From positions 62,001 to 126,000 of the forward strand of contig CDMY01000264.1 in NCBI GenBank assembly GCA_001179505.1: a DNA stretch of 64,000 bases. Reading direction: 5' to 3'. This document shows positions 8,492-61,949 of the stretch, one piece after another. Below the pieces are notes generated by a model, which did not search any database, was not told the DNA's origin, and saw only the letters and a list, made by a program, of their open reading frames with translations. Position 1 is the first letter of the stretch; every line of letters begins with the position of its first letter. This DNA is from Vitrella brassicaformis CCMP3155. Lineage: Eukaryota > Protista > Chromerida. Position numbers and translations under genes: made by a program.

Positions 8492-8526
<35 letters not shown>

Positions 8527-8903: not shown

Positions 8904-11900
8904 ATGAGGGTGTTCGGCAGCAGGGGTCTGAGGTCCTCCCTTCTGCCGTTGGCCGCCGCATCGCTGCAGTGGCTGTGGATACTTACAAGTGAGCTGGATT
9001 AGAAAAACATTTGATGTGCGAGGGCCGTGTGTGTTCACGTGTGTGCTGTGTCTGTTTGCACTGAGTGGATGTTTGGCTGCAGGCCATGCCACAGAGTGGA
9101 GCGATGAATTCGGTGAGCACTCAGCGGGGAAGACACATTCCTTATACATGGGCACGTGTGTGTGTATGTGTGTGTGGGTCTAGCCAATCCTGCATCGGCT
9201 GAGTGTCAGTGCAATGGGACGATAACCGGCTGCCCAACCGAAGGCAGATACTTCCTGTAAGCAGGCAGACACACAAGTGAACAGAAACACACAGAGAGAT
9301 GGACTCACATGCACACCCTGCAGGTACAATGACAGCTTTTCTCTGCATGGCTACACGCTGAATGCCTCCATCCCTGAGACAGACTTAGATGCGGTAAGGA
9401 CACACTGCGTCCGCGCGTGTGTACGAGCGTCAGCCTTGTTTCTGTCTCTCTGTGCACTGTGCAGAGGCGGCATGAGTGCGCTGTGCTGTGTCTGGTACAG
9501 ACACACACATACAGACAGACATGCACGTGCATCCATCCTGCTGTCCCGCACCACAGGCACACCCCGCATGTACAGGCTTCGAATACCGGGTAAGTAAGTA
9601 CGGCAGACGACGAGCCGCTGTGCCCAAGCTATGTAATGGGTGTGTGCAGGTAGACAGCGAGCGTCGGTGTGAGGTGCATATGAGTTTCGCCAAGCTGCCG
9701 CCGCCCGAAGAGCGCAACTCGACCACGACCAAATGTGTCCGCAGAAAGGGAGGCGGTACGAAATGCAACGTCTGCACAGACAGGAGGGAGGGAAGAAAGC
9801 ACGCATATAGATAGACACACGTGCATATAGATGGATGGATAACTGGATGGATGCAATGATTGATGGAACGCAGCGAATAAGATCGATCCAGCGGCGTGTC
9901 GCCTTGACAACGTGACGGAGCCGATCTTCTCTCTCGCCGACGTGAGCTCCTGGGACGACCCTCCATATAGCTCCGACCCCATCAACCCGCCCACGTTCGT
10001 CAGGCGGGCCCTCTGCTCAGAAGAGTGCATCAAAGACCGGTAACGAAGCAAGCAAGCAAGGAGGCAGACAGGCAGACAACGAAACAACCATATAAAATTG
10101 TGTGTGTGTGTAGGCGTTGCACGGGCATCGATTTCACCGCAGGCGGCACTGCGCCAGAGTGAAACGCCTATGATCCCTTTGACCTTTGACCTTCTCTATG
10201 CGCCGTGTGCTGTGTATGTCAGGTGCCGCCTACTCTATTCTCTGGTCAACTCGGGCGACCCCTCCTTCACTGACCGGGTGTGCTTCTACAAGAGTGGTCT
10301 GCCAGTGCCCGCACTCGAGCCCCCTGTGTTTTACCATTATGACGTGGCGATCATCACTCTCACCGTTTCATTTGGCGAGACCGTGTCGGCCGGCTTTGCA
10401 CCGGCCAATGAGTCCTTCGCCACCAATGGGACTCTCACTGACATAAGGTATGCATTCATTATCACACACACACATAAGATGATCTGATCATGTGGGCGCA
10501 TTTTGTGTGTGTGTGTAGGTCGGTTGCCGGAAATGACACGATTTACGAGGCCGTTATAGTGCCCGACGCGCCGCCCGTCGGCAGCAGCGACAACATCACC
10601 TTCATGCAGCTGACCGTGATGCATGGAATCGTCATGGATGACTTCGAGAACCCCAACCCCAACACCAACCTCTCATTCGCACGCGGTTAGCGAACCACGT
10701 GTGCGCAGCAACGGATCTGTGTGAGTGCGTCTCCTTCCCTCTCTTGGTCTGCGTGCTGCGTGTTGCGGCATACAGGTCCTCTCTTCAACGCGTTTCTCTC
10801 CTCGCCGCAGTCGGCGTGGCAGTCGGCGCCGGTGGAGCTGACTGTGACATTTGACAGAGACATCGGTGTGTTTGACCCGGCCGGGTTCTCCTTCTGGGCT
10901 CACTCCTTCGATCTCTCGGCCAGCGGCAGTGTGAGCGTGTCGAATGTGCGGCTGCAGCCAAACAGCGCGACAGTGGACATCCTGCCCTCGATTGAAGGGA
11001 AGGTCAAGATATGGTTCCTCTCCGGCTTTGCGTTCGACGCATACATCCCCGGCCGCAGCAGCTACGTCTCGCCAATGCTCGAGCTCGACTTCGGTCAAAA
11101 CACACTTTTGTCCTATGCATCCGTCCCATCTCTCTCCGTGTCTGTGTGTGGTCAGTGTACCCCTTCAACGTCACTCTGTCGAGTGCCAAGTCGCTGTGGG
11201 AATCGCTGCCCATCGAGCTGGCCATCGCCTTCGACAAACCCGTCAGTGACGCCGACTTCTCTCTGGCTGACCTGGTGCTCTCCCTCGACCCTTATGACCC
11301 CGGCTTCGGCGGCTCGGTGAACGTCATCGCATCCAACCTCCGCAGAACGCCCGCATCGGGTCCGTTCACCCATGCGTTGGTGGACCTGGAGCCGACAGTT
11401 GATGGCAACGTCACTGTGGTGCTGCCATTTGACACTGTCTCGGATGCTGACCGGCCCATCAGAGGCAACAACCCCGCACAACTCGTCCTCGAATACAGTC
11501 AGAAGGAGGAAAAGAGAGAGAGAAGGGGGAAAGGCTGTCACAGAAATTTGTGTTGGTGTGTGTGTGTTGCAGGGACGCCTGTGCCGACGGCAGTGCTGTA
11601 CATTGAAGGCGCCAGCAGCAACACCACGGCGGCCTACCCCATCTCAGTCAACGTCACTTTCAGCAAAAAGGTCACCATCGACGACATCGCCAAGCTGGAG
11701 CTCGTCAACAGCCAGCTGGTCGGCAGCGGGCCAGGTGCCATCACACGCGTGAGCGACAACTCGTTTTATTTCGCCGTCGAGCCGACGGGCGAGACAGTGA
11801 CCATTACAGCTGGCCAGGGGCTGGCTGTCGACGACGTCAGTCAGCCCAACAACCGCTCTCTGCCTCTTGTCGTCACATTCGGTGAGAGGAGGGAGAGAGA

Positions 11901-14900
11901 TACGAGCATGCGCAGCTGAATAAACTCCTGGCTGCCTGCAGATTACATCAACTCTCTCGCCGCGCTCGACTGGGTCACGAATGTCACTCTGTCGATGGCA
12001 AACACGCTCTTCAACACAGCCTCCTTCCAAGTGACACTCACCTTCAGCAAAGCCATCGTGGACACCGACTTCTCAACGAAGTTTCTTATCGACAGCTCAC
12101 CTGGTACTCCCAAAAAAGACAGACACATTCGCGCCGACATCTGAGCGTGCTGATTGCAGTGACGGCAATGAGTCTTCAGCGTCTGGGTGCGACTGAGTAC
12201 ACGGCGACATTGGCTGTCCCTGCGAGCAAGGGCGACGGCGATGTGATGGCCGTTGAGTTGGATGAGCGGGCAGTGACGGACACGGACGGGCTCACCAACC
12301 GTGCGTCCAACACTCTCAGTGTCGAATATGGTACGTGTGTCTCCGGGAAGCAGGACACATGCAGGGTGACCCACATTTGTGCATTCCAGATCCAATGCCG
12401 CCTGACATCACGATATCTTCCTCCTCTGCTCCCGCCACGAGACACCAGGACTTCTTTGTCGATGTCGCAGTCTCAGAGGTGCGATGGATATGACATGAAT
12501 GGGCATGCTGATATCAAGACGCACACATCTGTATGTCTCTGTCTCCGTGCATGCAGGTGGTGCAGCCGTTCACGACCAGCATATTCACTGTCGTGAACGC
12601 GGCGATAGTGTCGATGGCCGACAACCCGTCGCAGGCCAACGCCAAGATTCTGGAGGTGCGGGCGGCCACTGAAGGCACAGTCACCATCACAGTCGAGGTT
12701 GGACAAGTCGCTGATATTGTCGGCAACACCAACCACAGGATATCCACGCTCAGCCTCGAATATGGTGAACATGTTCTGCAGCCCGTGTGTCTCGCTTTCA
12801 CACGGGAGAATCTGGGTATGTATCTGTGCGTGCATTTGTGTGCAGATATCACCCCGCCATCTCTGGTCTTCAATCCGGCATCTGTGTCTGCGACTGAGGA
12901 GGCCGTCGGCGTGTCGGTCACATCGAGTGAGGCATCAGACGTCTTCTGCCAGCCGCTGAAGCCAGCTGACATCGCCACATACACCGGTAGGTCGGCGTCT
13001 TTTGCTCGCCCGTGTGGACATGTGGAGACGTGTGATTGTGCAGCGTCGGACTTCGACTTGATCAATGTGCCGCCGGCTACAAGCATCTCGCCAAAGCAGG
13101 AGAGGCGGGCAGTGGGGCCTGCAGCCTTCGCTGGCGCCTTTTCCTTCTCCGCACTGGTGCCTGACACGACCCACAATATATCATGCATTGCGATCGATGT
13201 TGCCGGCAACGTGATGGACAAGGCAGCCGCACTCACCGTCAAGACAACAGGTCCATACATATGAAGCGTACACATCCATACGAGCGTCTCTCTCCGTTTT
13301 ATGCAGCTATTATTCCGCCGCGTGTGCTGGTGCCCAATAGCAACGACACGGTTGTCATCACCAACGACAGGCATCTGCTCACTCTGCACTTCTCCGAAGC
13401 AGTGCGGGACATCAACACGGCCAATATCGTGGTGAGTGGGTCGCTTGGCCACCATGGATATGATGAATGAGAGTGCAGGTGTCCAACGCGGCTTTGATCG
13501 ACAGCAGCATTCGCGAGCAGCTGTATCTGGATCTGGTGCTGGAGGTCTCCACACAAGGGCCTGTGAGCGTCACGCTTAACGAGGGCGCCGTGAGGGACTC
13601 ATACGGCTCAAAGAATATCTTTTACACATATACTGGCCTCTTCTACGGTAGAAGCACAGAAAGGGAGAGAAACCCGCGTGCATTGAATATGTGGCTGCGT
13701 TGCAGACATAGACGAGTGTGCGACGGGCGGCCACAACTGCTCCGACACGTGCCACAACACACTTGGAGGCTTCATCTGCCACTGCCCAGCCAGCGCCCGG
13801 CTTCAGACGGACATGGCAACGTGCCTCGGTCGGTAACTCGTCAGTGAGAAAGCATATGTGCCGACGCATACACATGTTCATCTGTGTCTCTCCCTCGCTG
13901 GAACAGTGCAAGCATCGATCCAATCGGTGGATGTGTCACGCGCGCCACATACGGGAATACAGCTGTCGGTCGCTCTCACGGGCAGCCGGCTCAGCCCAAC
14001 CGACGAGCTGATTCTATTCCCCCTCACCACAGCCACCCCACAAGCGCACTCATCCTCTCTGCTGCAACTGATAAGCACGAACGCAGTCGACACATTCTAC
14101 CTGCTGCCATGCGCCGGCGACACAAACACGACCACGACACTCTCATGCGGTCCGATGGAATACGCCACCCCGCACGGCTACATTGTCGCTCTCTGCCACG
14201 AAGAGTGGATCCCCCTCTCGCCGAACACTCTCCTGCAGCAGAGGTACACGCAGCTGGCGGCAACGCCGGACGCCGTGCTGGCGGGTCAGCTCTCCATCGA
14301 TGGTGGGGAGGTGTCCGGCTCTGCGGCGTGTCAGAGCCTGACCTATCTGATGGACAGCGATCCGTCGGCATTTGTCGAGGAGATTGTGGTCCCTGGCACA
14401 CAGCCGCTGGCCAGTGCATCAGGTGGGTGGGTGGGTACTTTCTCATGTCAGTGCACAAAGATCGAGACTGAAATATGTGTGCGTGTGTGGTAACACAGAG
14501 CCACTCTCGGTCGTCAGCTTTTCCCCGACCACACTCAACGAGGCCGAATTGCAGACGATCAACATTTTGGCAGATGCCTTCGACGTCGGCAGAGACCGCT
14601 TCAAGATAGCGACATGCGGCGAATGCGCCACCTCAGAGGGCTTCGGCCTGACATGTGACTCATCGCTGGTGTGCATCACGGTGGTGCACAGGATCGCCCC
14701 CGAGCTTTGTCTGTGCAAATGCGACGCCTCTCTCACACTCGACGGCGACTGTCTCGCCGACCACAGTTTCTCTCCCGCACATGCAGCCAATTTCACCATC
14801 GTCCCACGTACGTACACATTGATGACTCGATACACGTGATGTACGTGACCTGCCTGTGTGGGGCATTTCAGAGAGCGTGTTTGTGTCGGCGGTCGAGTAC

Positions 14901-17900
14901 GTGGAGCAGAGACACCCCCCACAGACGGGCAGCTCCCTGCAGCTGACAGTGAGGGGCCACCACCTCGACCCAAGCAGAGACAGGCTCGCGCTGGTGCCAA
15001 GCGAAGGAGACGACTTCACATGCGGGGGCGATCAGCAGCCATCGACACTGACTTCACTAATAGTCCACTGCTCATGGTTCACGGAGCACCTTGTGTGCGA
15101 CAATATGACACTTCCCCACGCAGGCAGCTTCAAGGCATGTCTGTGCGACGGCACACAGCAGGGGTCATGTTTGGGAAGCGCAGACTTCTCGATCGAGCCG
15201 GCTGTGGACTCTGTCTTACAAACTTACTCTGGTGTGTGTCGCACGAATGGCATACGCACGACAGAAACACTCATGTCTCTGTCTTTGTTTGCCTGTCTGT
15301 TGCCTGTTGCCATTAGGTATGGTGTGTGGACAGGCATGCGTCACAGCTACTGAGTGTGAGACATTCACGCAGTCTCAGCCCAGCTGCGTAAGCGACGACG
15401 ATTGGTCGTCCGCATGCTGATACAATCCAGCTTTCCTCTCCCCCCTTTCTTTATGCCTGCAGGGACCTCGCTGCGGGAACGGCGTCGTCGAAGCCTCAGA
15501 GGATTGTGATGATGGTGAAGTAAAAATCAAAAAGGTCGCTCAAGCTTTGCCTTGTATTTTTGTGACGCTTTGCAGGCAACAATCTCTCCCAGGATGGATG
15601 CGACAGCCGCTGCAAGACTGAGAGCGGTGACGCTCTGTATCCCCTGCCCCGACTGATCAGCGCCGAGACTTCCTACTCGCCCGCCACAGCCACCGTCTGC
15701 TTCGAGGCGCCCCTTCCCGCACCATTCGACCGAGACCTATGCTCGTCTGTCGACAATATAGGCGTCTTCGGCTCAAAGACGCAGTGCGTGTGGGCCACCC
15801 CGGACAAGCGGTGCATTCTGATTATCTCGGGGGGCCATGACGCCACGATTAAACACAACCATGGCTCGATCAAGTCGGCCCTCAGATCGTTCGACGCCGT
15901 GCACTTTGAAGCGGGCGCGTCGATGGACACATTGGTGCCGACATCGAGGGTGGTGGCTGCAGACAGTATGTCGCTGTGCTCTGGGTCAAGTGAGCCTCTG
16001 CGGATTGACATATACACAGGGGGCAGCGGCGGGCGGCGGGTCTTGTACATGTTCAGCAGCGACATCCCCGAGCTGGCAAACACACTCAACCAAAACTCAG
16101 GCAAGCCAACCACACGTCATCGTCACACTCACGTAATGAGTGGTGTCTCGTGTGCACACAGGCTGGTGGCCGGCAGCCACCACAATCGAGGTCCCTCACT
16201 CCGTCCTCTCGCAAATACATGAGGCTGGTGAAGACACATTGACATCGACCATATCGGCAGAGAACTATCTCGGCATCTCGACAAAGCAGACAGTGGCAGT
16301 GGGGCTCATGAAGGATGTCTGCTGCGAGATGCCTACTCTGAGGACGACACGCACCACACTGTCATTTTCCCCGACGGGCCAGATGCGATTGCGGGCATAT
16401 CCACACTCACACGGAAATGGCAACCCGGAATCAATCGCGGGGGTCACCTGGAGGGCGCACTCACGCACTGCGCCGTGGACGGTGATCGATCTGACGGGCC
16501 AAGACATGTCTCGGGACAAACTTACTGTGCGAGTTGACACCAACGATGTCTTCAGCAGCCGCGAGGAATTCATTGGCCGGGTGTTCGATGTGTATGCTAA
16601 CATCTCTACAACGACAGGCTGTGAAAGACGCGCCAGTTTCGAGGTCAAGATCGACAAATACGGCGCTCCTGATCTTCATCTTCATCTCCAGCCACCTCTG
16701 ACAGTCGCCCTATCTGCAGCCAGCAGCCGGCCACTTGTTACCGAATGGTTCTGTGTGTGGACACCTCTCAGCGGCAGCAGCCCCTTCGCCGTGTCGTCCA
16801 CCCGATCGATGCCCTTCCATTCGGCACCCGAGCTGCTGCTGCGATCGCTGAGGCATGACGCGCCCATCCACGACTGTCTTGACCGCTCTTTGCTGGCAAG
16901 CGGCTCTTCTGTGGTGCCCCTCGATCCCACTGGCACTGCGGACGGGACATTCACCCTCGATATGGGGAGTGTCGCAGACGGCGTGTATGTGTTTGCCGTC
17001 GAGGCGAGCCAGGAAATGGGCGAGGGCGCTGTGGTCGGTGGCGCAGTGACAGTGTCGTCTTCTGGCAATGAAGTCTCTTTCCGGCACATTGACAGGAGCA
17101 TCGAAATGCCATTGTCGTCTCACGCTGTGGATCTGGGGACGAGTGCCCCCACCACACTGACGCCTTTGGTGTCTTACGGCCGCGTACAAGCAGAGGAGGT
17201 CTTTGCCGAGGAGATATCGCTGGCCAACGGGAGCGTCCCCGCCGGCACGCTGCACCCCGGATGGATCTACCACGCTCAGACCGACGACTGGCACACAAAC
17301 ATACGCGCCACGCTGTTCCCCTTCGCTGGGTCGTTGCGCGCCGATCCGCGTTCTGGCGGTGTGGTCATGGTCGAGCAATATGGTTGGGAAGTTGATCCAG
17401 CTGCAAAGGAAACCGGAAGAGAGACATACACCCTCTATCTGACGGACTCTTACCCAATCACGGCTGAGACACGGATACAGACGCTCTCGTTCAATCGCTT
17501 GGAGCCTTCTCTGCTCGTCTATGTGAACAAAGGCGACTACTTTGTACATTCGAAGCTCACGGACGCGCTTGGGTCGACCTGCTTCCTGGAGTGTGTGGGA
17601 GACGCGGATCTTGATTGGTCGGCGACATCGCTGTGTGACCCTGGGTGGGACAGACATCGGCCGACGATATGTCCGTTTGTGCGGGTGAAGGTTGTTGAGG
17701 GCATTGCGACGCTGGCAGACATCATGGGCCTGCTGGACGCGATGAGACACACTGATGTAGGGGACAGAGAAAGAGAGAGCCCTCTCACGTATCTCTCTCC
17801 CTATGTATGTCTGTGTATGGATGGCAGGATTCAGCAGAGATAGCCTCGGCTGTCATCGCCGCATGTGACACCCTCTCCTCTCTCGGCCAGCAGGCCGTCT

Positions 17901-23900: not shown

Positions 23901-24375
23901 GGCTTGTGTTGATCCCTGGGCTGAGCATCCTGTGCGTCACGGCCATCCTGATCCTCACCAAATACATCTCTGTGTTGGACCCCATCATCCTGCTGGTGCC
24001 CTCTCTCGTAGACTTCCCGCACTCCAGCAGACGTAGAAGGCGAAAGCAGCTCCCCACGCCCGACTATGTACGCATCGATTCCCCACCCACAGACGCAACA
24101 CACGTATATGCGCTCCCGCGTGTTCGCAGATCGAGCACAAGAAAGATGACCTCGAGCATGGCGAGCAGCAGGATCCACTGGTCAACGACTCCCCATTGAG
24201 TCAGGAGAGCCCTTCTCTCGGATCATCCGAGCAGGAAGAGTTGCATGGCGTAGTGAGGCCGGCAGATCACACAAGGCTCTCGCCGACCACACACGGCAGA
24301 CGGCCGTCCAACACAGATAGGCGCCAGTCGGACAGCGCACGGGTGTCAGTGCGCAGCTCGCTGGGCGAAATATGA
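8904..24375 (+). CDS. Giant polycystin-1/REJ-GPS-like multi-pass receptor, paralog A
   Basis: Signal peptide [28 protein letters not shown]; repeated Ig-like beta domains ([33 protein letters not shown]); EGF-Ca; Cys-rich blocks; DUF4215-type repeat; long exon 16140-17750 (REJ-like); GPS motif; TM helices including [37 protein letters not shown]; ends SLGEI*. Colinear with paralog B, with shared intron positions in the first two exons. Confidence 0.8.
13706..13828 (+). other. Calcium-binding EGF domain exon (paralog A)
   Basis: [40 protein letters not shown] fits the EGF_CA consensus. Paralog B has VNECAASSMNNCSDVCVDRLNGFECQCSGTARLEDDQSTC at ~57590-57710. Confidence 0.9.
15463..15625 (+). 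other. Myxococcus-type cysteine-rich repeat (DUF4215-like), paralog A
   Basis: Spliced [16 protein letters not shown]|[15 protein letters not shown]. Paralog B has RCGNGMIEGGEQC|DDSNRFSQDGCSTFCTLD at ~55750-55915. Confidence 0.8.
18895..19065 (+). other. GPS (GAIN autoproteolysis) motif, paralog A
   Basis: [24 protein letters not shown]|..[13 protein letters not shown] fits the GPS pattern C-x-(W/Y/F)...C...C-x-C-x-H-(L)-(T/S)-x-F, followed shortly by a hydrophobic segment. Confidence 0.85.
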
Positions 24376-24515
24376 TCTGGAGTAGCTGCATCCGTGTCGG
24401 TAGCGTTTGGTACCCAGGTAGATACACGATAGCGGGAGAGAGAGGTACAGACAACTGGATGAGTGTAGTCAGCCGGGAGTTCATTTGCGTTCATGGTTTC
24501 ACAATGTGGTAGACA

Positions 24516-37628: not shown

Positions 37629-37660
<32 letters not shown>

Positions 37661-48175: not shown

Positions 48176-48394
48176 ATGGCACCGTTTTTCGTCAAGGCGA
48201 CCGCCGACAACAAGAAGAACGTGTGGAGATACCCAGACCGTGTGGTGTGCTCGAGCGAACATGGCCGCAGGTGGGAGCTGGGGGCGTGGAAGAGCGAGGC
48301 AGATGCAGAGAGGGCCGTAGTGAAGGTGGCGCAGTGGCTGTGCGACAACCCCAGGGGCTATCTGGGATGGGGCCCGAAGTCCACACAGACGTAG
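48176..48394 (+). CDS. Small hypothetical protein (72 aa from this ATG; may have an upstream exon)
   Basis: GC3-rich, microsatellite-free ORF MAPFFVKATADNKKNVWRYPDRVVCSSEHGRRWELGAWKSEADAERAVVKVAQWLCDNPRGYLGWGPKSTQT*, preceded by an intron-like acceptor at ~48157. Confidence 0.55.
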   Translation: MAPFFVKATADNKKNVWRYPDRVVCSSEHGRRWELGAWKSEADAERAVVKVAQWLCDNPRGYLGWGPKSTQT

Positions 48395-48790
48395 CGAGCT
48401 GACTGAGACAGACAGAGAGGCCTTTAGTGTGTAGCTTCCTCTTGTGTCTTCCTGTGGGACAGACAGCCCCAGGCCGGCTGCAAGTGGGTGTTCCGGTGAG
48501 AGAGAGGAGACAAGAGATTAGTCCATGCCGGCGGCTGGATGGATGAGGGAGGATAGGATGCCACACACATGGATGGATGGATGGATGGACGGATAGATGG
48601 ACGGTGTGTGATATGGCGTTCGCTGACAGTCACCACTCCATAAATGTGCATACGACGGACGCATACATACATACATACATACACGCAGTTAGAGAGAGCA
48701 GTCTGCCAAATGCCCTACTTGCGGGTCTGGCGCTTCTACAGGTATACACATGGACACGGGCTACTGCTTGTAGTTCATTCAGGCCGCTAC

Positions 48791-51700: not shown

Positions 51701-54700
51701 GTTGTCCTCCCGTCGGGCATAGTCGATCTGTGCCTGCATGAGCAGCACATCCAGCTGCTCAAGCCGCTGCTGCTCCCTCTTCTTCTGGTTGGTCAGCCGC
51801 GTGTGCCGCCTCGTCCCGACACTTGCACGCGACAGCCTCGCCGTGGTCTTGCTGTGCTTCTGCATCTCAATCTCCTTCATGACCGAGAGGGTGAAGTGGT
51901 CCGCCGGCTGGTGTGCCCCTCGGTGTCTGAACCGGCGGATGGCCACGAGGGCGTCTTTGATTGAGGCGCGGTGGTCTCGCTGCTGATCTTGCTTCTGCTT
52001 TTTCTTGCTGGGCCGCCGCGGGCAGATGATGCCGAATAGGAGGAACAGCGGGAGTAGGGGGAAGAGGATCAGCCGCCTGGGAGTTATGTAGAGCGGCCCG
52101 ATAGGCAGACACCCCTGACACAACATAAGACAGACAGAGAAGGAGGAAACGTGTCGGATACGTGTCTCTTGGTCTCACGAGTATTCGAATGGCGGGCATG
52201 ACGACACAGAGGAATCCGCTGTTCTCCCGCCTTTCATAGATGTCGCGGAAGAAGAAGGGGAGCCTGTCGTCGATCGGCATCCAGTCAAAACGATCCTAAC
52301 ACACGACCAGGGACGCATTTGTGTCCTGTTAGACACGCACATGGCTCACTGGACACACTCACCCGCAGCCACAGAGCGACAACGGGGACCTTGAGCAAGG
52401 CAGTCGACAGCACCACAAACACCAAACCAAGATTGCCTAGAGAAAGGATTACAGGTGTCGATAAATGAGCGACACCTCATCAGTATGCGTGTCTCTTTGT
52501 GATGCCTACCGGCCTTGAGCATGCTGAGCAGCACACTGGTGTCGAATGTGAGCTGTGGACTGTCGCTGCCCTTGCCGCCGTCCACACGCACATGATCGTC
52601 CACATAAATCGCAGCCGTAAACGTCGTCAGGTGTGTACACGCGCACTTCACACATACACAGAGAAAGGTACACATTCATACCCGAGACGCATGCCTTCGT
52701 CTGGTGGATCGCACCTGGATCGACACATCAGTGGCCGTCACGTTGCATTGCGCATCGACGTACTGCTCATTCCCCTCATCCCACTGCATGCACGACGGCT
52801 GTCCAGAGGGCGCCGATGCATCCCGCGGGAATGACAGCACCAGGTCAACGTTCTGCACGTCAGTGAGCTTCGTCGCGTCTCGCCAAAGGTCCACTGTGAT
52901 GGCCGTGTCGAGCACAAGTGCTTCTGGTGTGGGTGTGTGTTTGGACAGAAGGGGGTTGCTGGGCAGAGTGACTGCGGTGGCGTGCGTGGCGTTGGCATTG
53001 GCTATACTTGCCGCTGAGAGAAAGATGCGCGTCTGCAGACATAGATGCATGTGTGTCTCTTTCCTCTTTCACGCCTCTCTCTCTCGCTGGCTCACTGTGT
53101 TGATGCCCAGTATGGTGTTGGCCTGTCTGGGCGTCATTTGGATGGAGAAGTCATCCTTGGTGTGCACCAAAGGCAGCGAATACTCCCGGGCAAGCCTCGT
53201 GATATTCTCATAGACCTCGTCCTGCATTTTCAGTTAAGAAACAAGATGCATACGCACATACACGTGCTCTTTCTGCTCATATTGCCCACCATCAGTGCCA
53301 ACGCGTCTGTGGCGTTGCCATCCTTGGTCAAGAATCCCCTCTTCGCCAAGGCATTCATGACGGCGGGCAGCACCCGCAGCAGCAGTGAGGCGCTCTCTTT
53401 GTCTGTCTCCGTGATCAACTCTGTCAGCTCCCTCACAACCGCCACCAGTTCGCCAGCCATTAGTGTGTCTCCGGCCATGTCGGCCAGCTTCTCAGCTGCC
53501 TGTGCGACAAGCATCTGGGTCTCTTGCGTATCGTCGTCAGTATCGATCAAGGATAGAAGTTCCATCAGCTGAGACATGAAGACGGCATCATCACCTTCTC
53601 CCTCTTCCTCTCCTTTCCCCCTTCCGGCCTCTGACGCAGCAACAATGTAGGAAGCGATTTCTGCGGAATCAGCGGTGCCGTTCAGCATGTCGCTTATGTT
53701 GCGGAGCGGCGCCGCTGCTGCTGAGACAACAATTCTCGCATAGGGGCAGGTCGGTGTGCTCTTGTCGTTCGTCGCCGTGCAGAGCGACGACAGCATCCAT
53801 GGCAGCTGGGTGTTGTGATGGCACGGCAGATGGCAGGTGTTGTTAAGCGCGTCCGTGATATGCGAATAGATCAGGTAGTCTCCTGGCGGCAGATGCACGA
53901 GCAGACAGGGGTCCTGTCGTCGGTAGGACAGCACTCGTATCGGCTTGACGCTTTCAAATTCGGTCACGAAGGTGCTGTATGTTTCTCGGCCCATCTCGCG
54001 CGCATAAGGGTCGATCTCCCACCCATACTGGTCGATGTGCACTCGGCCATCCCCCACCGACGCCCGCAACTGGCCAGCCACCGGGAAGAGTGTGGCGCGT
54101 ATGTTTGTGTGCCAGTCGTCGGTCTGAGCGTGGTAGATCCATCCGGGGTGCAGCGTCCCCGCCGGGACGCTCCCGTTGGCTAGCGATATCTCCTCGGCAA
54201 AAACCTCTTCTGCTTGTACGCGACCGTAAGACACCAAAGGCGTCAGTATGGTGGGGGCACTCGTCCCCAGATCCACAGCAGCATGAGACGACACCGGCCG
54301 CTCGATGCTCCTGTCAATGTGTCGGAAAGACGTTTGCAGGTCGCGTGTGACAGTTATCGCGCCGGCGGCCACGCTGCCTTTGCTCAGCTCCTGGCTGGCT
54401 TCGACGGCAAACACATATATTCCCTGCCGTGTGTTGTTCAGTCTGTAGGAGACGCTCCTCTCCGTAAATGGCACCACCTGTGTCGCAATCAGGGCGCTTC
54501 CATTCATGTTGCTCTCCATCAGCGTGTAGTTGAAGCAATCGTGCACTGTCGCGTTGGCAGCAAGAGCCCGGAACAGCAGCTGAGGGGCCGACAGGTATGG
54601 CGGAGTGCGTGTGGGCGAGACGGCAAATCTCGAAGTGACAGGCGTCCAGACGCAGTACCAATCCGTCCTTGTTGGCTGCGCCGCGCCTTGTGGCTCGATG

Positions 54701-57700
54701 TCCAGAGCAAGGGTCATGTTGCCGCCCAACGAGAGAGACAGTGCTGGCGCGTCGTATCTGTCGACCCGACGGGGAACACGGCTTCCCTGTTGCAAGTCGG
54801 CGAAGTGATGTTGGCGGCGATATCGAACCGGCTCTCGACGTCTTGTTCGGAGACGCTCATCACGAGAGTGGACGTGTTGCCACGATCCGGCAGCCACGTC
54901 ACCGTTGCATTGCGGGGAGCCCCTGATCGTAGACGTATCTGCAACAAGGCAGCAATAGGCGCCGATTCGCCTGATTGATCGGCTCTTCTCTCTTAACCTT
55001 CTCCGTGGGCTTGAACGTGTATATTTTGCGCTCGACTGACACAATTGGCTCGTTACAGCAGGTCTCCTTGAGCAAGGGAATCTGCACGCGCCTTGTTGCG
55101 GATACGGAAAGGTAGCTCTCGACCGTTATGACAAGCAGCAGCGGCTTCGAGCTGATCTCCTGAACCTGAGCCAGCAACGTCCGGCTCAGCACCAGCGTCG
55201 TGACTGGCCTCTTCAAGCCTGCACCACCACGACAAACGGTTGTCTGCCGGTTTACGCGTTATTGGCGTACCTGATGCCTGCTCCAGCGTGTCAGAGAGCG
55301 GCAAACACAGCTGTCTCGGCTCACAGCCGAACGAAAACTTGACCTTCCGTCCGCCGGCTCCGCCCACCAACACGTCCACGCGCAAATCCTCTTTGCCACA
55401 GGTAGAAAAATGGTCAGGTGCCATCACGCGGATGGAGGGAAAGACGGTGTCGATTTGGGGAGATGCCAAGTACTTCACGTCCTCGGTCGGGTTCAGCGTG
55501 CTCCTGACTTTATCTTGCAGAGACAGCGTCGCTCCCTCTCCAGCAATCAACAAGACGCACCTTCTGTCAGGCGTGGCCCACATGCAGTGGGCTCCCTGGC
55601 CAAAAAGGCCTATGCTGCCGATGGCCGCGCAGGGGTTGCTGCCCTTGCAGCAGAGAGGCGCCTCGAAGCAGACATGGGATACCGCGGGCGAGAAGGACGC
55701 GGCGGCTGACACAAGTCGGGGCTGAGGGTACGGCGTGTCCTCGGAATCGAGGGTACAGAAGGTGGAGCAGCCGTCTTGCGAGAAACGGTTAGAGTCGTCT
55801 GGATGGCACAGAAGAAGGGACACAAGCCATCACCCCCTCAGACCCCTGCGCATGGGTGCGTGTGCGCATACCGCATTGTTCGCCTCCTTCGATCATCCCA
55901 TTCCCACACCTGGCACTCTAAAGATGGAGAGATTAACACAGATGTGACTGTCTTCTCTCATCTAGGGTGCTTACGCAGTTTTTCGAAGGGTTCAGTGCCA
56001 GACATCCCTCCGCTGTGGTGCATGTCTCCCCGCATATATTGCCAGGGTAGACCTCGATAACCGAAGACGCTGCCGGCTCCACTGCAAAGTCTTCTGGGTC
56101 TTCACACGTGCCGCTGTCCGAGGCATCGCACAGACATGCCTTGAAGCTGCCCGCGTGGGGTGGAGCCACACTGTCGCACACAATCTGCTCGTTGGTGGAC
56201 TGCTGTGACGCTGGGCAGATGACAGCCGGGGCCGCCGAGCCGCAAGTTGTGCTTGCGTCGCCGGCAATAAGAGTCAGCCTGTCGCGTTGGGCATCGAAGT
56301 AATTGCCCCTGATGACCAGCGTGATATTCTCGCCCGCCCCGGGAGCCTTGCCGGGGTTCGACTGCTCCACCGCAGTAACAACGCTCTTTTCTGAAAGGAT
56401 ACACACACACACAACGCATTCGAGGAGGCGGAAAAAGAATTGGATGGCAATCGAACTCAATCGATAATGCTCATCAGCCAGTTGCCCCCGCCGGCGTTTT
56501 TGGAAGGTGCGAAGTTGTTCGCGGCCGAGCAGTCGCCGTCGAGTGTAGGTGAGGCATCGCACTTGCAGAGACACAGCTCGGGGGCGACCCTGTATGCCAC
56601 CGTGGTGCACACCAGCGACGGGTCGCATATCAGGTCAAATCCCCCTGACTGCGCACAGGAGCCGCACGTGGCCAGCTTGAGTCGATCCGTCTGCGTGTCG
56701 AAGCCATCTGCCACAAGCTGTACTGTCTGCGGCTCGCTCTCGATCAGGACCTTCGGGCTGAAGTCCCTAATAATGAAAGAGGCTATGGCACACACACACA
56801 AGAGAGATCATAAATGTAGAGGACAGGATGATCGTGGTCACCGGATAATGAGGCGAGCGGTTGAGGGCCTGGAATGATGATCTCTTGGATGAGCGCCACG
56901 GAGTCGTTCAGGATGAAGCTCAAGCTCTGGCACGCGACAGATGTAGTCTTCTCCTGCTTGCTAAGCGACAGATCCTCAGCCAGAACCACATCCGGCGTCC
57001 GCGGCAACTTCACGTCGGAGTCTTTGAAGAGGTTCTCCAGGATCCGTGCAGAGGTGTTTCTCGCCTGCGCCCTCAGCTGCTGATAACTCTCCAACAGAAA
57101 CGTGTTGTTGGATCGCGGCACCCACTCGTCGTGGCAGAGGGCCACTATGTAGCCATGATCCGACGTGAAGTCGAAGGGGGCCGCAGACGAGCTCCGTGTC
57201 TTGCTTGTTGATGTCGTCCTTCAAATCCTCGGGAATCTCACAAGGCAGCAGATAGAATCTTTGGACTTTGAACTCCTCGAGCAGCTGCTCCAGCGATGAT
57301 TGCGTGCCCGACAGTTCTGTCACCAGAGGGAACAGCATGAGCTCGTCTGAGCGGTCAAACCGCTTGCCACTTAGAGTGACAGACAACTGAGGGCGCATGA
57401 GGCACACTGCGACATCTGCTCATGTGCCTCTGTGAAGATGTCCCACCTTAACCCCGACTTCTGGCGGCCTTGAGACGTCCACACTCTCAACCGATGCTTG
57501 CACTGACAAAGAGGCAGGCCGACACATGACAAGAGAAAGAAGAAAGCGGCATGTGTTCTCTTCGATATGTCTGTCACCATAGCAGGTGGACTGATCGTCT
57601 TCCAATCGAGCAGTGCCCGAGCACTGACACTCAAAGCCGTTGAGTCTGTCCACACACACGTCACTGCAGTTGTTCATCGACGATGCCGCGCACTCATTGA

Positions 57701-60700
57701 CGTCTACAGAGCAAGGCAGTGTGAGACAGAATGCGTGTGCACGCGATCTCATTATCTCATCGCTTACCAAAGAGCAGCCCAGTGTACGAGTAAAACAGAT
57801 TGCCTGAGCCGTATGAGTCAATTACAGCCCCCCCATGCGAAGTCACGCTCAGAGGTCCTTCTGCCGGGATCTGCAGGGTCACGTCCAGATAAATCTCTTC
57901 CCGCACCGCTGCGCCAATCAGTGCCGCGCTCGTCACCTAGCACATGCACCTTGAAATCATCGTATCTCAATATCTCGGCTGAGGTGGCTTACGTGTATTT
58001 GGCTGGTGTCGACATTCCGGACCAGCTCGGAGAACTCCAGTGTCAACACGTGCGTCTCATTGTTGGTAATGACGGTGGCGTTTGTATTTGGCAAGACCAC
58101 GTGCGGGGGAATGATCGCTGCTCAACAACAGATTCACAGCAAATTGCAAATAACGATTCATTTCAGATCTGTCCTCACGTGTCGTCCTGATGGCCCGCGT
58201 GGCGGCGACGGTCTGGACAGTGCCGCCCTCGTCGACAGCCACAAATGAGATATCGTGATTGGTGTCGGGAACCAGCCCAGAGAAGGTGAAGACCCCACTG
58301 CTGCCAAAGGCCATCTGCTGCTTTGGTGATACGCTGGTGGTTGGTGGCTGATTGACCAAGTCGAAGTCGGAGACGGTGTTGGTCACAAAGTCGGCGCTCG
58401 TGATTGGCTGGCAGTATATGAACGCCGTCTCAGAAGCGACGACTTGCACCGTGATGGTCTCCTCACTAGCCACGATCGATGTCGCATTGAAGGGGAGAAC
58501 GGGCGGTGTAATGTCCGAGTCCACCGCGGAAACTTGCATGCACACCTTTGGCTGACTGTTGTCTCCTTGGCTAACCGAATATCACTGTGAAGCTGGCCTG
58601 TTGAGTGTTGCCATTGCCAGCGAGATCCACAATCTTGCCCGCATCGATCTTCACCTCCACGTTCCCCTCAGCTACTGCTTCCAAGCGCACTAGGTCGCCG
58701 TCTATCGAGAGTATTGCGGCGTTGGTGAGCGTGAAGGTGCTCGCTCCGAGAGGCTGCGATGCCAGGACGAAATTGTCGTCGGCCACAGTCACGGTCACAT
58801 TGAACTGTTGCTGTCGTGTTTTGGGCCCAGACGTGGAGGAAAGCGCGATGGTCGGAGGAATAGGGTCTGGAGGAGACAGCAAACTGCTTTTGTTGGTTCA
58901 TGTGCCTCGTCCCTTACTGACCAAATTCGACGGTGATTGTGTTGGATCGCTGGTTGGTCAGGCCCTTGTTGTCCTCGGCCGCCCTTTCCGCCAGATACAC
59001 TTCCACAGTGCCCCCGCCCGTCTTGGCGTTGGGCACGAGGATTGTACACCTGAAGTCTCTGCCGCTGATCCGCTCCCACGACGTCACATCACCCTTCTCC
59101 CCATCCACCATGAAGTACTGCGTAAAATCTTTGTTTGTTGTCGTGCTGGTGCTGAACCTCATGTTGACCGGGAAGCTCGCCGTGTTGACGAGGGATGAGG
59201 CCGTGAGGTCAACTGTCGGAATCCAGTCTAAAGCCTGGCCAGAACCGATGTAGTCTACACACACAGACACACGCACGCACACAGAGAGAGACCAGAGACA
59301 GTGCGGGTCAACCGAGTGGTGTCTCTCTGACCGAAAGTGACGACAAGCTGCAGAGACTCTTGATTTGGTTTGCTGGCGCTATCAACCGCCAGTCCCTCGT
59401 TTGCTTTGATCGTCACAACGTCGCTGCTCGGGGTGACGTCGAAGGAAAAGGTGCTCGGGCCTCCCGTGACGCCTGCAGCGGTGATGTTGCCGTTGGTGAC
59501 CGACAGCTTCGTCTGGTCGCTGATGGTGACATCTTTGCTGAATGCGATGAACACTCGGAAAGGGTAGGCTGCTGTGGTGTCTTGATTGTCCTGCAAATAC
59601 AGCACTGCCGTGGGAATGGGCGTCGCTGACAAAGCAGACAATGACATGAGGCATCCTGTGTGTGACACTTCTCGTGTTGGTTGTCTCACTGTAGTCGACT
59701 GCGATCGAGGCTGGCGAGTTGCCCCTGTATGGGACGGCCGCATCGGCCACGACATCATCGCCGATCGTCACGTTCACTCTGCCCTCGACGGTGGGACTCA
59801 GCTCAACTGTCACCTGTGCTGCAACGCACACACGCACACACACGAATATTCACGGAAAACAGGGAGTGGATCTATCCTTACAAGCCCCCACGAGCACATT
59901 GGAGTACACGACGTCCGCTGATGGCTGCTGTGCGGGATTCAGCGCCTCAATAGAGAGCGTGAGGTCTTCAGTTCTGTTGAAAGTAGCGACGTCAATGGGC
60001 TCCTCCAAAGGTGATAACAACGGTGATGGGCAAAGACGCCCACGCCGCCTGGGGAGAGGACATGGTGGCCGAGAACGGCAGCACGGCTGCAATAAGCGCA
60101 TGCATCACATGTGCATGTGTAGATGGTGTCTATCAGCACAATGCGCGTACTGTATGTAAACCTGAAAAGAGAAGTATATCCACAATGTATAATGCAGGCT
60201 GCAACACTCTCAGTTTATCGTCAATACGTGAAGTTGGTGTTGGGGTTTGGGAGCCCGAGGCCATCCTGTGGAGAAGCACGCACCCGCGTTTGCTCGATGC
60301 AACGGCACACATGCACGTATGTCTTCGTACCTTCACAATGCCGTGCATGACGGTCAGCATCAGGTACGTCACACTTCCGCCTCCGGTCGGAGCGTCGGGC
60401 ACTATCACAGCCTCATAGAGAGTGTCATTGCCAACAGCCGCCCTGTCAGTATACACACAGGTGAGCGTCGGCTCGTCACCGTGGTATGCACATGATGATG
60501 TCTCTGTGTGATCGTGCCTGATGTCGGTGAGAGTGCCGTTGGTGACGAAGGACTCGGTGGCCGGCGCGAAGCCCGCCGACACGCTCCCGCCAAATGAGAT
60601 ACTGAGAGTGATTGGGGTGGTGTAATAGCTCGGAGGCGGGTCGACGATTGACGGCGCGGGCACTGTGTGTAAGAATATACCCATCCGTATGTGTATTTGT

Positions 60701-61949
60701 ATACGTTGACCTATGTGTGGCTGTGCATTTCTCAGGGGGATACCTGACTTGTGGTAGCACGTGCGTTTTCCTGGTGCGGCGGCGTCGTACGAGTCGATCA
60801 AGCCATAGAGGATCCGACACTCGGGCTCTTCCGGCTTCCCTGTGTGCTCAATCGCGGTGCAACGCCTGCATACACACGTGAAGCACACATCAAGGTCAGT
60901 CAGTCGGTCAGCGCGGATTATACTCGCCGCACACTCACCTGTCCAGAAGGCACTCCACCGAGCAAATATATCTTCTCTCCCAATCGCCGGTGTTGCTGTT
61001 CCAGTCAAGCTCGGTCAGATTGGCGATGCGGTAGAGTGTCTCCTGGCCGCCACTCCGACAACCACCACTGTTCTTAAACGCTAAAGACATCCATCAACAT
61101 TCATATACGGTGTGAGATCGATCGATCGACCGATCGATCGCCAGTACGTATTGTCGTACCTCCTCCTTGCCGAACGATGCAGAGCGTGGTGGTGGAGTCC
61201 TGTGTGGGAGGGATCTTGGCCCAGCTATGGTGAATTCTGCAATGCCGCGTGCTGTCAATCTGCAGCCGACATGGACGTGCCCACGTATGGCATGCAGGAA
61301 GAGATACAGACATGTGTGAGAAAGCCTCACGTTGAGCTGGAATCCTGTACAGACAGGATGCGCGCTGCAAAGCAAATCAGACGTCACAGGTTCACCCACA
61401 CCAAGCGGCACGTGCCTCGTTTGCCTGTCTTCAAAAGCTGCTTACAGACACAGTTCTCCACATTCCATCTTCCTGGCCTCGGTGTCGCCCTCAGGGATGC
61501 TCGTGCTCAGCGTATAGTCATGGAGCGGAAGAGTGTCCGTGTACCTGTGTACAACACGTACAACACAGAGATGTACGTACGTGTACACGTACGCACGCAC
61601 GCGTAGGATACGTATATATTTATGTACTCAAAGAATCTGCCCTGGCTGGGGCAGCTGCCTTCGCAAATGCAATCGGACGTCACATCGGGCTCTCCACCAA
61701 CGCGCGACATACAGGAAAACAGCCACTCATTGAAACCGACACAACTGGTGCGCTTCTGCTCACTGAATTCATCTGTCCACTCTGCAGCATCGCCTGCAGA
61801 AAACACAGGAGACAACACATGCTCAGCTGTCGCCATCTGCAGTGCAAATGTGTGCATCCCCCACCTGTCCACAAAAGCAACTTCAACGAAAGGACAAGCA
61901 AAGCACGAGCAATGGGCACCGTCGTGATGATCCCTTTGCGGCCGTGCAT
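48791..61949 (-). CDS. Giant polycystin-1/REJ-GPS-like multi-pass receptor, paralog B (in-frame TAG at 49899-49901)
   Basis: Signal peptide MHGRKGIITTVPIARALLVLSLKLLLWT, then the same domain order as A: Ig-like repeats, EGF-Ca, Cys blocks, DUF4215 repeat, long exon 53230-55200, GPS SCMQWDEG...KCACTHLTTFT (HLT at 52625-52633), NHPVLSA|..[18 protein letters not shown] and further TMs. Probable end SAVGEI* (the last acceptor is ambiguous). Confidence 0.78.

What the first reader, a model, noticed from the sequence alone, without database searches (positions are those of the whole stretch)
8904..61949. Convergent pair of giant polycystin-1-like GPS receptors without a recognisable channel domain
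Seen: two paralogous genes of ~15.5 kb (8904-24375, +) and ~13.2 kb (48791-61949, -) point toward each other across ~24 kb. Both run signal peptide, Ig-like repeats, EGF-Ca, Cys repeats, REJ-like region, GPS, TM, long cytosolic region, several more TMs, short tail. Established: REJ-GPS followed by an H-x-x-x-S...F-T-R-x-Q-R TM segment is the polycystin-1 (PKD1) family signature, and both copies have it ([13 protein letters not shown]; HPVLS..FSTRAQRF). Inference: this is an alveolate, probably chromerid, adhesion or mechanosensory receptor family. I saw no PLAT domain and no 6-TM TRP-like PKD channel block after this segment, so it may be a distinct receptor class.
Basis: partly seen in the sequence, partly recalled or inferred. 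Interest (0 to 1): 0.85.

Follow-up and report, generated by a model that had tools for sequence, protein, structure and literature searches.

The report
Paired giant self-cleaving algal surface receptors
Two neighbouring giant genes of the chromerid alga Vitrella encode sister surface receptors with a long adhesive outer part, a probable self-cleavage (GPS) site and five to seven membrane helices but no ion-channel part; the suggested kinship with human polycystin-1 could not be shown.

Summary
Gene A (8904-24375, +) is a public 3,742-aa protein of Vitrella brassicaformis with 62 exons. One spliced 6-kb contig confirms its 3' third. Gene B (61949-48791, -) is colinear with A at about 45% identity. 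A third, shorter paralog lies on another contig.

Shown:
- Domain order is signal peptide, 2 PAN/Apple, about 8 Ig-like modules, cbEGF, DUF4215, an unassigned 680-aa region, helical bundle, GPS.
- The GPS is real: the paralog profile hits ADGRF1 at E=2e-5, and Pfam GPS passes threshold in the third paralog.
- There is no PLAT, PKD_channel, REJ or 7tm_2 match.

Corrections:
- Three hydrophobic segments follow the GPS, not one, and four more follow a ~730-aa cytosolic loop.
- The "PKD1 signature" HPLLS..TRAQRF is present, but against real human PKD1 it scores no better than 5-13% of shuffles.

Both AlphaFold models were poor, so the GAIN, REJ and membrane folds remain untested.

Best reading: a lineage-restricted, channel-less GAIN/GPS receptor family. 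It resembles polycystin-1 in plan only, and membership is not shown. This scan already flagged similar "channel-less polycystin-like" genes elsewhere in this genome. It is a new variant of a known kind, of moderate interest.

The parts
8904..24375 (+). Gene A: 62 exons, 3,742-aa annotated product P0001 (3,744 aa with the RNA-supported 16-nt micro-exon)
   Evidence: Exact exon mapping of P0001. 15 of 15 listed RNA joints agree with the model.
8904..9087 (+). A: signal peptide (aa 1-30)
   Evidence: Hydrophobic N-terminus read directly from the sequence. Inference only; no predictor was run.
9186..10289 (+). A: two PAN/Apple domains (aa ~40-235)
   Evidence: Pfam PAN_1 at 29.5 bits with 2 stretches, against a cut-off of 21.4. 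UniRef names the protein 'Apple domain-containing protein'.
10302..13646 (+). A: array of about 8 Ig-like beta-sandwich modules, four of them clear Big_12-type (aa 577-652, 680-767, 780-866, 995-1080)
   Evidence: Pfam Big_12 E=9.6e-14 with 4 stretches. My own iterated HMM finds the same four repeats in A and in B.
13647..13824 (+). A: calcium-binding EGF domain (aa 1091-1130)
   Evidence: Pfam EGF_CA 32.3 bits, cut-off 27.
15343..15628 (+). A: DUF4215 Cys-rich repeat (aa ~1536-1585)
   Evidence: Pfam DUF4215 30.6 bits, cut-off 27.
15629..17720 (+).
   Evidence: No Pfam hit at E<=10. No relative outside its own cluster among 1.84 billion representatives. Weak language-model lead to a REJ-bearing cluster at 0.81. 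AF2 pLDDT below 50.
17721..19078 (+). A: GAIN-like domain, a helical bundle (aa ~2258-2438) followed by a beta-rich part that ends in the GPS (aa ~2560-2600)
   Evidence: AF2 predicts seven helices at pLDDT 65-89 directly before the beta part. The three-paralog profile hits the ADGRF1 GPS at E=2.2e-5.
19046..19054 (+). A: predicted GPS cleavage triplet H-M|S within CACTHM|SSFTAAI
   Evidence: Alignment to the ADGRF1 sequence CQCTHL|TSF. Position.
19136..19782 (+). A: hydrophobic segments H1 (aa 2620-2650), H2 (2677-2699) and H3 (2704-2724), with the conserved cytosolic linker RDRxDWxPxxDRLxFFFRD
   Evidence: Hydropathy in all three paralogs. Three-way alignment.
19237..19252 (+). A: micro-exon inside H1. 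The RNA contig supports 16 nt, not the annotated 10 nt, and adds two residues (FW)
   Evidence: 14 extra letters in the X6 joint 19161>19319. The check shows this restores colinearity with paralogs B and C.
19783..23069 (+). A: ~730-aa cytosolic loop with a long coiled coil (aa ~2882-2992) and conserved beta-rich islands; no PLAT
   Evidence: 7 Cys and 2 N-x-S/T sequons against 69 and 29 in the ectodomain. AF2 helices at pLDDT 73-96. Pfam finds nothing at E<=10.
22913..23090 (+). A: juxtamembrane block [26 protein letters not shown], the most conserved stretch of the protein (74% identity between A and B)
23091..23962 (+). A: four TM segments H4-H7 (aa 3463-3483, 3513-3543, 3563-3586, 3597-3626)
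   Evidence: Hydropathy. AF2 helices at pLDDT 65-75.
23963..24375 (+). A: ~115-aa cytosolic tail ending in ...GEI, which is conserved in all three paralogs
48791..61949 (-). Gene B: paralog, about 46-48 exons and ~3,300 aa in my own model. It has the same domain order as A, with one Ig module fewer and a shorter loop
   Evidence: Homology-guided splice dynamic programming, which recovered 58 of 62 exons exactly when benchmarked on gene A. Colinear tblastn matches.
52595..53697 (-). B: GAIN-like region with the GPS sequence CACTHL|TTFTAAI (HLT codons at 52625-52633)
52025..52534 (-). B: hydrophobic segments H1-H3
49219..50139 (-). B: juxtamembrane block (NHPVLS..FSTRAQR) and H4-H7
17136..17341 (+). 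~200-nt tract about 95% identical in DNA to 54062-54267 of gene B, while flanking exon DNA is 60-77% identical: a probable gene-conversion tract

Best explanation
The two genes are tail-to-tail paralogs of a Vitrella-restricted family of giant surface receptors; a third, shorter member lies on another contig. Shown: each encodes one polypeptide. The extracellular part is about 2,600 aa and carries 2 PAN/Apple domains, about 8 bacterial-type Ig modules, a cbEGF, Cys-rich modules and a large unassigned beta-rich region. It ends in a helical bundle plus a beta part with a canonical four-cysteine GPS motif (C..C..CxCxH[LM]|[ST][ST]F). Inferred: this is a GAIN domain that cuts itself at H-L/M|S/T. 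The adhesive N-terminal fragment would then stay non-covalently bound to a membrane fragment that starts with the conserved peptide (S/T)(S/T)F(T/A)AA(I/L). The membrane fragment has 5 to 7 helices: H1, a possible H2/H3 hairpin, then H4-H7. These are split by a ~600-730-aa cytosolic loop with a coiled coil, and the protein ends in a conserved ...GEI tail. It has no pore-forming block. Ligand binding or pulling on the ectodomain would therefore be passed on through the tethered peptide and the helix bundle to cytosolic partners or to a separate channel subunit, not by ion conduction of its own. In overall plan this resembles the front half of polycystin-1, but homology of the membrane part to polycystin-1 is not demonstrated.
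For: - Gene structures and paralogy.
- A single spliced transcript contig runs from the large pre-GAIN exon to the stop codon.
- Domains.
- GPS: Pfam 23.9 bits, above the 22.5 cut-off, in paralog P0004 and 15.2 bits in P0001. The paralog profile hits ADGRF1 at E=2.2e-5, aligned through CxCTHL|TSF.
- A helical bundle at pLDDT 65-89 lies directly upstream of the beta part.
- The nearest language-model neighbours of the region carry Pfam GPS, at 0.91.
- Topology: Cys and sequon density is high in the ectodomain and low in the loop, and a K/R cluster follows H3.
- Seven conserved hydrophobic segments are present.
- No PLAT, PKD_channel or 7tm_2 hit.
- The family appears restricted.
Against: - Both AlphaFold models are poor (mean pLDDT 44.7 and 48.1). 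No fold search returned a GAIN domain, PKD1 or any receptor. The GAIN beta subdomain and the helix bundle are therefore not structurally confirmed.
- Copy A has Met rather than Leu at position -1 of the cleavage site, and cleavage is untested.
- Whether H2 and H3 cross the membrane is unknown.
- No functional data exist.
- RNA evidence here covers only the 3' third of gene A. Gene B rests on my own model, and no full-length protein for it was found in the databases.
Confidence: 0.6

Rival explanations
1. One reading: these are true, divergent polycystin-1 family members. H1 corresponds to PKD1 TM1 and H4-H7 to PKD1 TM2-TM5 (the N-terminal transmembrane domain). They would have lost, or never had, PLAT and the six-TM channel-like half.
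For: - The overall order matches PKD1's front half: big ectodomain, GPS, TM, cytosolic loop, conserved H..LS...TR.QR block immediately before a TM, then further TMs.
- Real PKD1 reads HIWLSIWDRPPRSRFTRIQR at that place. The Vitrella block sits at the same topological position and is the most conserved part of the protein.
- Weak language-model leads point to REJ-bearing (0.81) and PLAT-bearing (0.79) clusters.
- An earlier unchecked scan note on another gene of this genome reports a five-helix part like the front half of PKD1.
Against: - The three-paralog profile scores real PKD1 at 3.0 bits, reached by 5.2% of full shuffles and 12.8% of segment-preserving shuffles.
- PDB searches with the motif or the whole C-terminal part never return PKD1.
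- No REJ, PLAT or PKD_channel match at E<=10.
- Two extra hydrophobic segments (H2, H3) have no PKD1 counterpart.
- The H5-H6 loop is about 20 aa. The ~230 aa I recall for the PKD1 TM3-TM4 loop comes from memory and was not checked.
Confidence: 0.35
2. They are adhesion-GPCR-like seven-TM receptors. H1-H7 would form a GPCR-type bundle with the 730-aa insert in intracellular loop 2, and signalling would go through G proteins.
For: Seven conserved hydrophobic segments with N-out/C-in polarity. The large insert falls exactly between segments 3 and 4, where ICL2 lies. The only significant solved-structure match is the GPS of an adhesion GPCR.
Against: No 7tm_2 or any GPCR Pfam hit. The ADGRF1 alignment stops at the GPS although that chain includes its 7TM. 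H2 carries a conserved mid-helix Arg and prolines, and AF2 models it as a 12-residue helix. H1 begins about 30 residues after the cleavage site, which by my recollection is further than in adhesion GPCRs.
Confidence: 0.1
3. They are structural adhesins or matrix anchors without a signalling role. The GPS would be a non-cleaving relic and the membrane part merely an anchor.
For: The ectodomain is built of adhesive modules (PAN, Ig-like, EGF). Copy A has Met at position -1 of the cleavage site. There is no recognisable signalling domain.
Against: The strongest conservation lies in the cytosolic juxtamembrane block, the H1-H2 linker and the C-terminal GEI, not in the ectodomain. All four GPS cysteines, the His and the +1 Ser/Thr are kept in all three paralogs.
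Confidence: 0.15
4. The giant genes are annotation artefacts: several neighbouring genes fused by prediction.
For: Only the 3' third of gene A is covered by the RNA contigs shown. The public model of the third paralog is split in two.
Against: A single spliced contig crosses 25 or more introns from the pre-GAIN exon to the 3' UTR. Three independent loci keep the same module order in one uninterrupted frame chain. Introns are uniformly 47-118 nt with no intergenic-sized gap.
Confidence: 0.04

Closest known systems
Polycystin-1 / REJ family (PKD1, PKD1L1-3, PKDREJ, sea-urchin suREJ)
   Same: A giant modular ectodomain ends in a GPS immediately before the first TM. A cytosolic loop follows TM1. 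A conserved H..LS...TR.QR-type block lies at the cytosolic start of the next TM (real PKD1 sequence). From general knowledge, the sea-urchin REJ proteins show that the number of TMs in this family varies (1, 2 or 11).
   Different: There is no PLAT in the loop, no Pfam REJ match and no six-TM PKD_channel half. Two additional hydrophobic segments follow H1. A coiled coil lies in the loop; from my recollection PKD1 carries its coiled coil in the C-terminal tail. Similarity of the membrane part to PKD1 is not above chance.
Adhesion (class B2) GPCRs, e.g. ADGRF1/GPR110
   Same: A significant GPS match that covers all four cysteines and the HL|T site. A helical subdomain precedes the beta part, as in GAIN (fold description in PMC3321182). 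The post-cleavage peptide (S/T)(S/T)F(T/A)AA(I/L) resembles a tethered agonist. There are possibly seven TMs.
   Different: There is no 7tm_2 signature. A 730-aa insert lies between segments 3 and 4. The ectodomain is made of PAN and bacterial-type Ig modules.
GAIN-domain proteins of other alveolates (Tetrahymena thermophila, more than eight GAIN domains; Arac et al. 2012, PMC3321182)
   Same: They show that GAIN/GPS receptors exist in alveolates, so the presence of a GPS in a chromerid is not new in itself.
   Different: No sequence relative outside Vitrella was recovered here. The relation to the ciliate proteins was not tested.

Membership tests
Polycystin-1 (PKD1/REJ) family | REJ domain (PF02010) upstream of the GAIN/GPS | tested here: inconclusive
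   No Pfam REJ hit at E<=10 on P0001:1569-2274 or on P0004. No relatives were found for this region. There is only a 0.81 language-model lead to a cluster in which 22% of members carry REJ. The AF2 model is too poor to judge the fold.
Polycystin-1 (PKD1/REJ) family | GPS motif next to the first TM | tested here: met
   Profile against PDB: ADGRF1 GPS at E=2.2e-5. Pfam GPS is above its cut-off in P0004 and scores 15.2 bits in P0001.
Polycystin-1 (PKD1/REJ) family | PLAT domain in the first cytosolic loop | tested here: not met
   No PLAT hit at E<=10 in P0001:2680-3390 or in P0004. AF2 shows a coiled coil plus scattered low-confidence strands.
Polycystin-1 (PKD1/REJ) family | Eleven TMs with a C-terminal six-TM PKD_channel/TOP block | tested here: not met
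   No PKD_channel or Polycystin_dom hit. Only ~115 non-hydrophobic residues follow H7, and the stop codon is confirmed by the spliced contig.
Polycystin-1 (PKD1/REJ) family | Sequence similarity of the TM2-TM3 region, including the HxWLS...FTRxQR block | tested here: inconclusive
   The strings are present in A, B and the third paralog. Real PKD1 (6a70_B 245-330) scores 3.0 bits against the paralog profile, matched or beaten by 5.2% and 12.8% of shuffles. PDB searches give chance hits only. A profile of the PKD1 family itself was not available.
Adhesion GPCR (class B2) | Secretin-like 7TM domain (Pfam 7tm_2) after the GAIN | tested here: not met
   No 7tm_2 hit at E<=10. The profile alignment to full ADGRF1 chains covers the GPS only.
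GAIN domain | ~320-aa fold: six-helix subdomain A, then a beta-sandwich subdomain B whose last strands are the GPS | tested here: inconclusive
   A helical bundle at pLDDT 65-89 precedes a ~160-aa strand-rich part that ends in the GPS, about 340 aa in all. Subdomain B is below pLDDT 50, and fold searches gave only generic helical repeats.
GAIN domain | Four GPS cysteines and an H-L|T/S cleavage triad | tested here: met
   A has FCM..AGC..CACTHM|SSF, B has SCM..AQC..CACTHL|TTF and P0004 has FCM..AHC..CTCNHL|STF. Actual cleavage cannot be tested here.

The most novel reading that the evidence does not exclude
These proteins, and the wider set of 'channel-less polycystin-like' genes noted across this genome, would be a third architectural class of GAIN-domain receptors. 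They would be neither 7TM adhesion GPCRs nor 11TM polycystins. Their own 3+4-helix membrane module would be split by a large cytosolic signalling loop, and they would have arisen or expanded in the chromerid/apicomplexan-related lineage as its main adhesion and mechanosensing system.
Probability: 0.3. Interest if true: 0.65.

Novelty: new variant of a known kind. Interest (0 to 1): 0.45.

Why it matters
GAIN/GPS autoproteolysis is the activation switch of adhesion GPCRs and of polycystin-1, the main kidney-disease protein. How the cleaved stalk talks to the membrane part of polycystin-1 is still debated. A free-living relative of apicomplexan parasites that couples a GPS to a small membrane module without any channel half would offer two things. 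First, it would be a natural minimal system for studying signalling by the stalk and the helix bundle alone. Second, it would add a data point on what the ancestor of GAIN receptors looked like. It also shows how chromerids assemble cell-surface adhesion proteins from PAN/Apple modules, which apicomplexans use in invasion proteins, and from bacterial-type Ig repeats. The value is limited at present: the fold of the membrane part and the cleavage are unproven, and GAIN domains were already known in alveolates.

Tried and rejected
1. Pfam on single exons of gene A found almost nothing. The full annotated protein was needed.
2. An exhaustive HMMER search of 1.84 billion representatives with the 567-aa 'REJ-like' exon returned only its own cluster and one chance bacterial hit.
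3. Three word-indexed homology searches (whole length, and the TM region in two length classes) found only P0001, a bacterial Big_12 protein and the third paralog P0004. Gene B's protein was never returned.
4. Two metagenome scans found no relatives.
5. AlphaFold2 on P0001:1569-2660 and P0001:2543-3742, with alignments of only three paralogs, gave mean pLDDT 44.7 and 48.1. Foldseek-PDB, VIA-wide and ESM-Atlas shape searches then gave only designed helical repeats and coiled coils. I treat these as uninformative, not as evidence against GAIN or PKD1 folds.
6. PDB sequence searches used the C-terminal part, the motif alone, and profiles of both. They returned no PKD1 or PKD2, only chance hits (LCMT2, SOAT2, influenza PA).
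7. The first versions of my splice model for gene B kept in-frame introns or over-spliced. They were replaced by a tuned version that recovers 58 of 62 exons exactly on gene A. The model is still uncertain in the second and third Ig modules and at the H6/H7 exon.
8. Literature searches for prior description in Vitrella or Chromera, CRMP-type proteins, or the motif strings found nothing relevant.
Full report
**What is there**

The window is intron-rich eukaryotic DNA at about 56% GC. An exhaustive protein search with the largest + strand exon returned a 3,742-aa database protein, P0001, at 99% identity. The sources name it as an unnamed or 'Apple domain-containing' protein of Vitrella brassicaformis CCMP3155.

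Mapping P0001 back onto the window gives 62 exons from 8904 to the stop at 24375. There are 61 introns of 47-118 nt, 58 GT-AG and 3 GC-AG.

**Transcript evidence**

I laid public runs on 18400-24399, keeping to the 6,000-letter limit. Runs X1 and X6 hold spliced contigs. All 15 joints listed coincide with model introns.

One X6 contig of 6,000 letters runs from about 1.1 kb of spliced sequence upstream of 18653, inside the large exon 16162-17756, through the stop codon and about 1.1 kb beyond. The pre-GPS region, the GPS, all membrane segments and the tail are thus on one mRNA.

The contig also corrects the annotation. The micro-exon is 16 nt (19237-19252), not 10 nt. This adds two residues in the first hydrophobic segment and removes a 2-residue gap against the paralogs.

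The N-terminal two thirds of gene A were not covered by the reads call.

**Gene B**

No database protein for gene B was returned in any length class. I therefore modelled it myself with a splice-aware dynamic programme. Training used gene A's codon usage and splice sites, and tblastn matches guided the search. When benchmarked on gene A with B as the guide, the tuned version recovers 58 of 62 exons exactly.

For B the model gives about 46-48 exons and ~3,300 aa. B is colinear with A from end to end at about 45% identity and ends in the same ...GEI.

B has one Ig module fewer and a cytosolic loop about 200 aa shorter. Some exons remain uncertain: the early Ig modules and the H6/H7 junction.

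**A third paralog**

Searching with the membrane region found P0004 (1,547 aa) on another 243-kb contig. Its locus also encodes PAN and Ig modules upstream and then jumps to the equivalent of residue ~1300 of A. It is therefore a shorter full family member whose public model is split in two.

**Ectodomain**

Pfam on P0001 gives the following:
- PAN_1, two stretches, 29.5 bits when the N-terminus is scanned alone.
- Big_12, four stretches, E=9.6e-14.
- EGF_CA, 32.3 bits.
- DUF4215, 30.6 bits.

My own iterated HMM finds the same four clear Ig repeats in A and B. The surrounding ~100-aa modules, roughly one per exon, bring the array to about eight.

Gene B's exons give sub-threshold EGF_CA and Big_12 hits at the matching places.

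**The 'REJ-like' region**

The ~680-aa region before the helical bundle has no Pfam match at E<=10. It has no relative outside its own cluster among 1.84 billion representatives. There is only a weak language-model lead, at 0.81, to a mollusc cluster in which 22% of members carry REJ. 'REJ-like' is therefore unverified.

**GPS and GAIN**

The GPS is real. All three paralogs keep C...(W/F)...C...CxCxH(L/M)|(S/T)(S/T)F.
- Pfam GPS passes its cut-off in P0004 (23.9 against 22.5 bits) and scores 15.2 bits in P0001.
- A profile of the three paralogs hits the GPS of the adhesion GPCR ADGRF1 at E=2.2e-5. The alignment runs through CQCTHL|TSF.
- The nearest language-model neighbours carry Pfam GPS.

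The AlphaFold model places a seven-helix bundle directly upstream, at pLDDT 65-89. A strand-rich ~160 aa follows and ends in the GPS, about 340 aa in all. This is the layout of a GAIN domain as described by Arac et al. (PMC3321182). The beta part is below pLDDT 50, however, and fold searches returned only generic helical repeats. GAIN is likely but not shown.

**Membrane part**

Hydropathy shows seven conserved hydrophobic segments in all three paralogs.
- H1 begins about 30 residues after the cleavage site.
- A strongly conserved linker follows: RDRxDWxPxxDRLxFFFRD.
- H2 has a conserved mid-segment Arg.
- H3 follows after 4-6 residues and is proline-rich (LFPLLPLFL).
- A K/R cluster and a loop of ~600-730 aa come next.
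- Then come the block DRLRYQRW..VV(R/K)R(D/N)HP(L/V)LS..PF..RAQR, and H4-H7.
- A ~115-aa tail ends the protein.

The loop has 7 Cys and 2 sequons in 731 aa, against 69 and 29 in the 2,570-aa ectodomain. This fits an outside ectodomain and an inside loop. That topology requires H2 and H3 either both to span the membrane (7 TMs) or neither to span it (5 TMs plus a hairpin). The second AlphaFold model is too poor to decide (mean pLDDT 48.1). Its confident parts are a long coiled coil (aa ~2882-2992, pLDDT up to 96) and the H4-H7 helices at 65-75.

No PLAT, PKD_channel, Polycystin_dom or 7tm_2 is detected at E<=10. There is no room for a six-TM block after H7.

**Is it polycystin-1 family?**

I recovered the real human sequence from the PDB copy: HIWLSIWDRPPRSRFTRIQR, followed by TM2 and TM3 (6a70_B 245-330). 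The resemblance is visible by eye, and the block is the most conserved part of the Vitrella proteins (74% identity between A and B).

Statistically it does not stand out.
- The three-paralog profile scores the real PKD1 segment at 3.0 bits.
- That score is reached by 156 of 3000 full shuffles and by 384 of 3000 shuffles that keep the TM/loop block structure.
- PDB searches with the motif, with profiles of it, or with the whole C-terminal half return unrelated proteins and never PKD1.

This test uses a single PKD1 sequence, not a family profile. It therefore leaves homology open rather than excluding it. I put true homology of H4-H7 to PKD1 TM2-TM5 at about one in three.

Two defining features of the PKD1 family were tested and are absent: PLAT and the channel half. 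REJ is undetected. I do not file these genes as polycystin-1 family members. They work like the known GAIN receptors in plan only.

**Context from the scan**

The same stretch of gene B was noted from another window (s1-197321). The word 'polycystin' occurs in 26 notes on this genome. One is a follow-up (s1-212016) that calls another 19-kb gene a channel-less polycystin-1-like receptor of a large alveolate family. These are unchecked AI notes. I could not link those genes to this pair by sequence. They do indicate that this architecture is recurrent in Vitrella and that the present pair is not a first sighting.

**Mechanism and verdict**

Shown:
- One large spliced gene (at least its 3' third) with a paralog in convergent orientation.
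- An adhesive modular ectodomain.
- A conserved GPS.
- 5-7 TM segments and a large cytosolic loop.
- No channel, PLAT or GPCR signature.

Inferred:
- GAIN-type self-cleavage.
- A tethered peptide.
- Signalling through the helix bundle, the coiled-coil loop and the GEI tail to unknown partners.

This is a new variant of the known GAIN-receptor kind, restricted to Vitrella as far as these searches reach, and of moderate interest.

Noticed in passing
window 17136-17341 (+) and 54062-54267 (-): About 200 nt of exon DNA are ~95% identical between the two paralogs and encode a 55-aa identical block ([14 protein letters not shown]...IRATLFP). Other exon DNA is 60-77% identical. This looks like a recent gene-conversion tract between the convergent copies.
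   Followed up: partly
window 19237-19252: The public model of gene A uses a 10-nt micro-exon. The spliced contig of run X6 supports a 16-nt micro-exon with a GT donor at 19253. This adds two residues (FW) in the first hydrophobic segment and matches the paralogs.
   Followed up: yes
window 48791-61949 (-): No protein for gene B was returned by searches that should have found it: it shares long exact words with gene A, and length classes from 651 to 6,548 aa were covered. The public annotation of this locus may be missing or fragmented.
   Followed up: partly
L001:5844-15659 (CDMY01000887.1): A third, shorter paralog. PAN and the first Ig modules are followed directly by the equivalent of residue ~1300 of gene A. 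The public annotation splits it into a 457-aa and a 1,547-aa protein.
   Followed up: partly
window 27371-28267 (-): An open stretch between the two giant genes matches Pfam Bestrophin_2 (E=1.2e-12). This is a bestrophin-type anion-channel gene lying between the receptors.
   Followed up: no
window 7726-8664 (-): A weak, sub-threshold WD40 match (21.6 bits against a cut-off of 27) in an open stretch just upstream of gene A.
   Followed up: no
window 42520-43000: An earlier scan note (s1-197214) places an oxidosqualene cyclase with unusual product-determining residues here, between the two receptor genes. I did not examine it.
   Followed up: no
window 16100/16162, 20158/20247, 23821/23902: Three of the 61 introns of gene A are GC-AG. 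The last one is confirmed by the spliced contigs. Many introns are rich in (CA)n/(TG)n.
   Followed up: partly
P0001 aa ~3040-3380 (window ~21200-22900): The cytosolic loop holds conserved islands: FYMW..LHPA.HF..KWR..D..GPLK.I, F.YEGP...SACFC..NG..H.WW.HDGLV and ..F.D.L.A..F. AF2 models these as about seven short strands plus a helix at low confidence. This may be a split PH-like or other beta domain standing where polycystin-1 has PLAT.
   Followed up: partly
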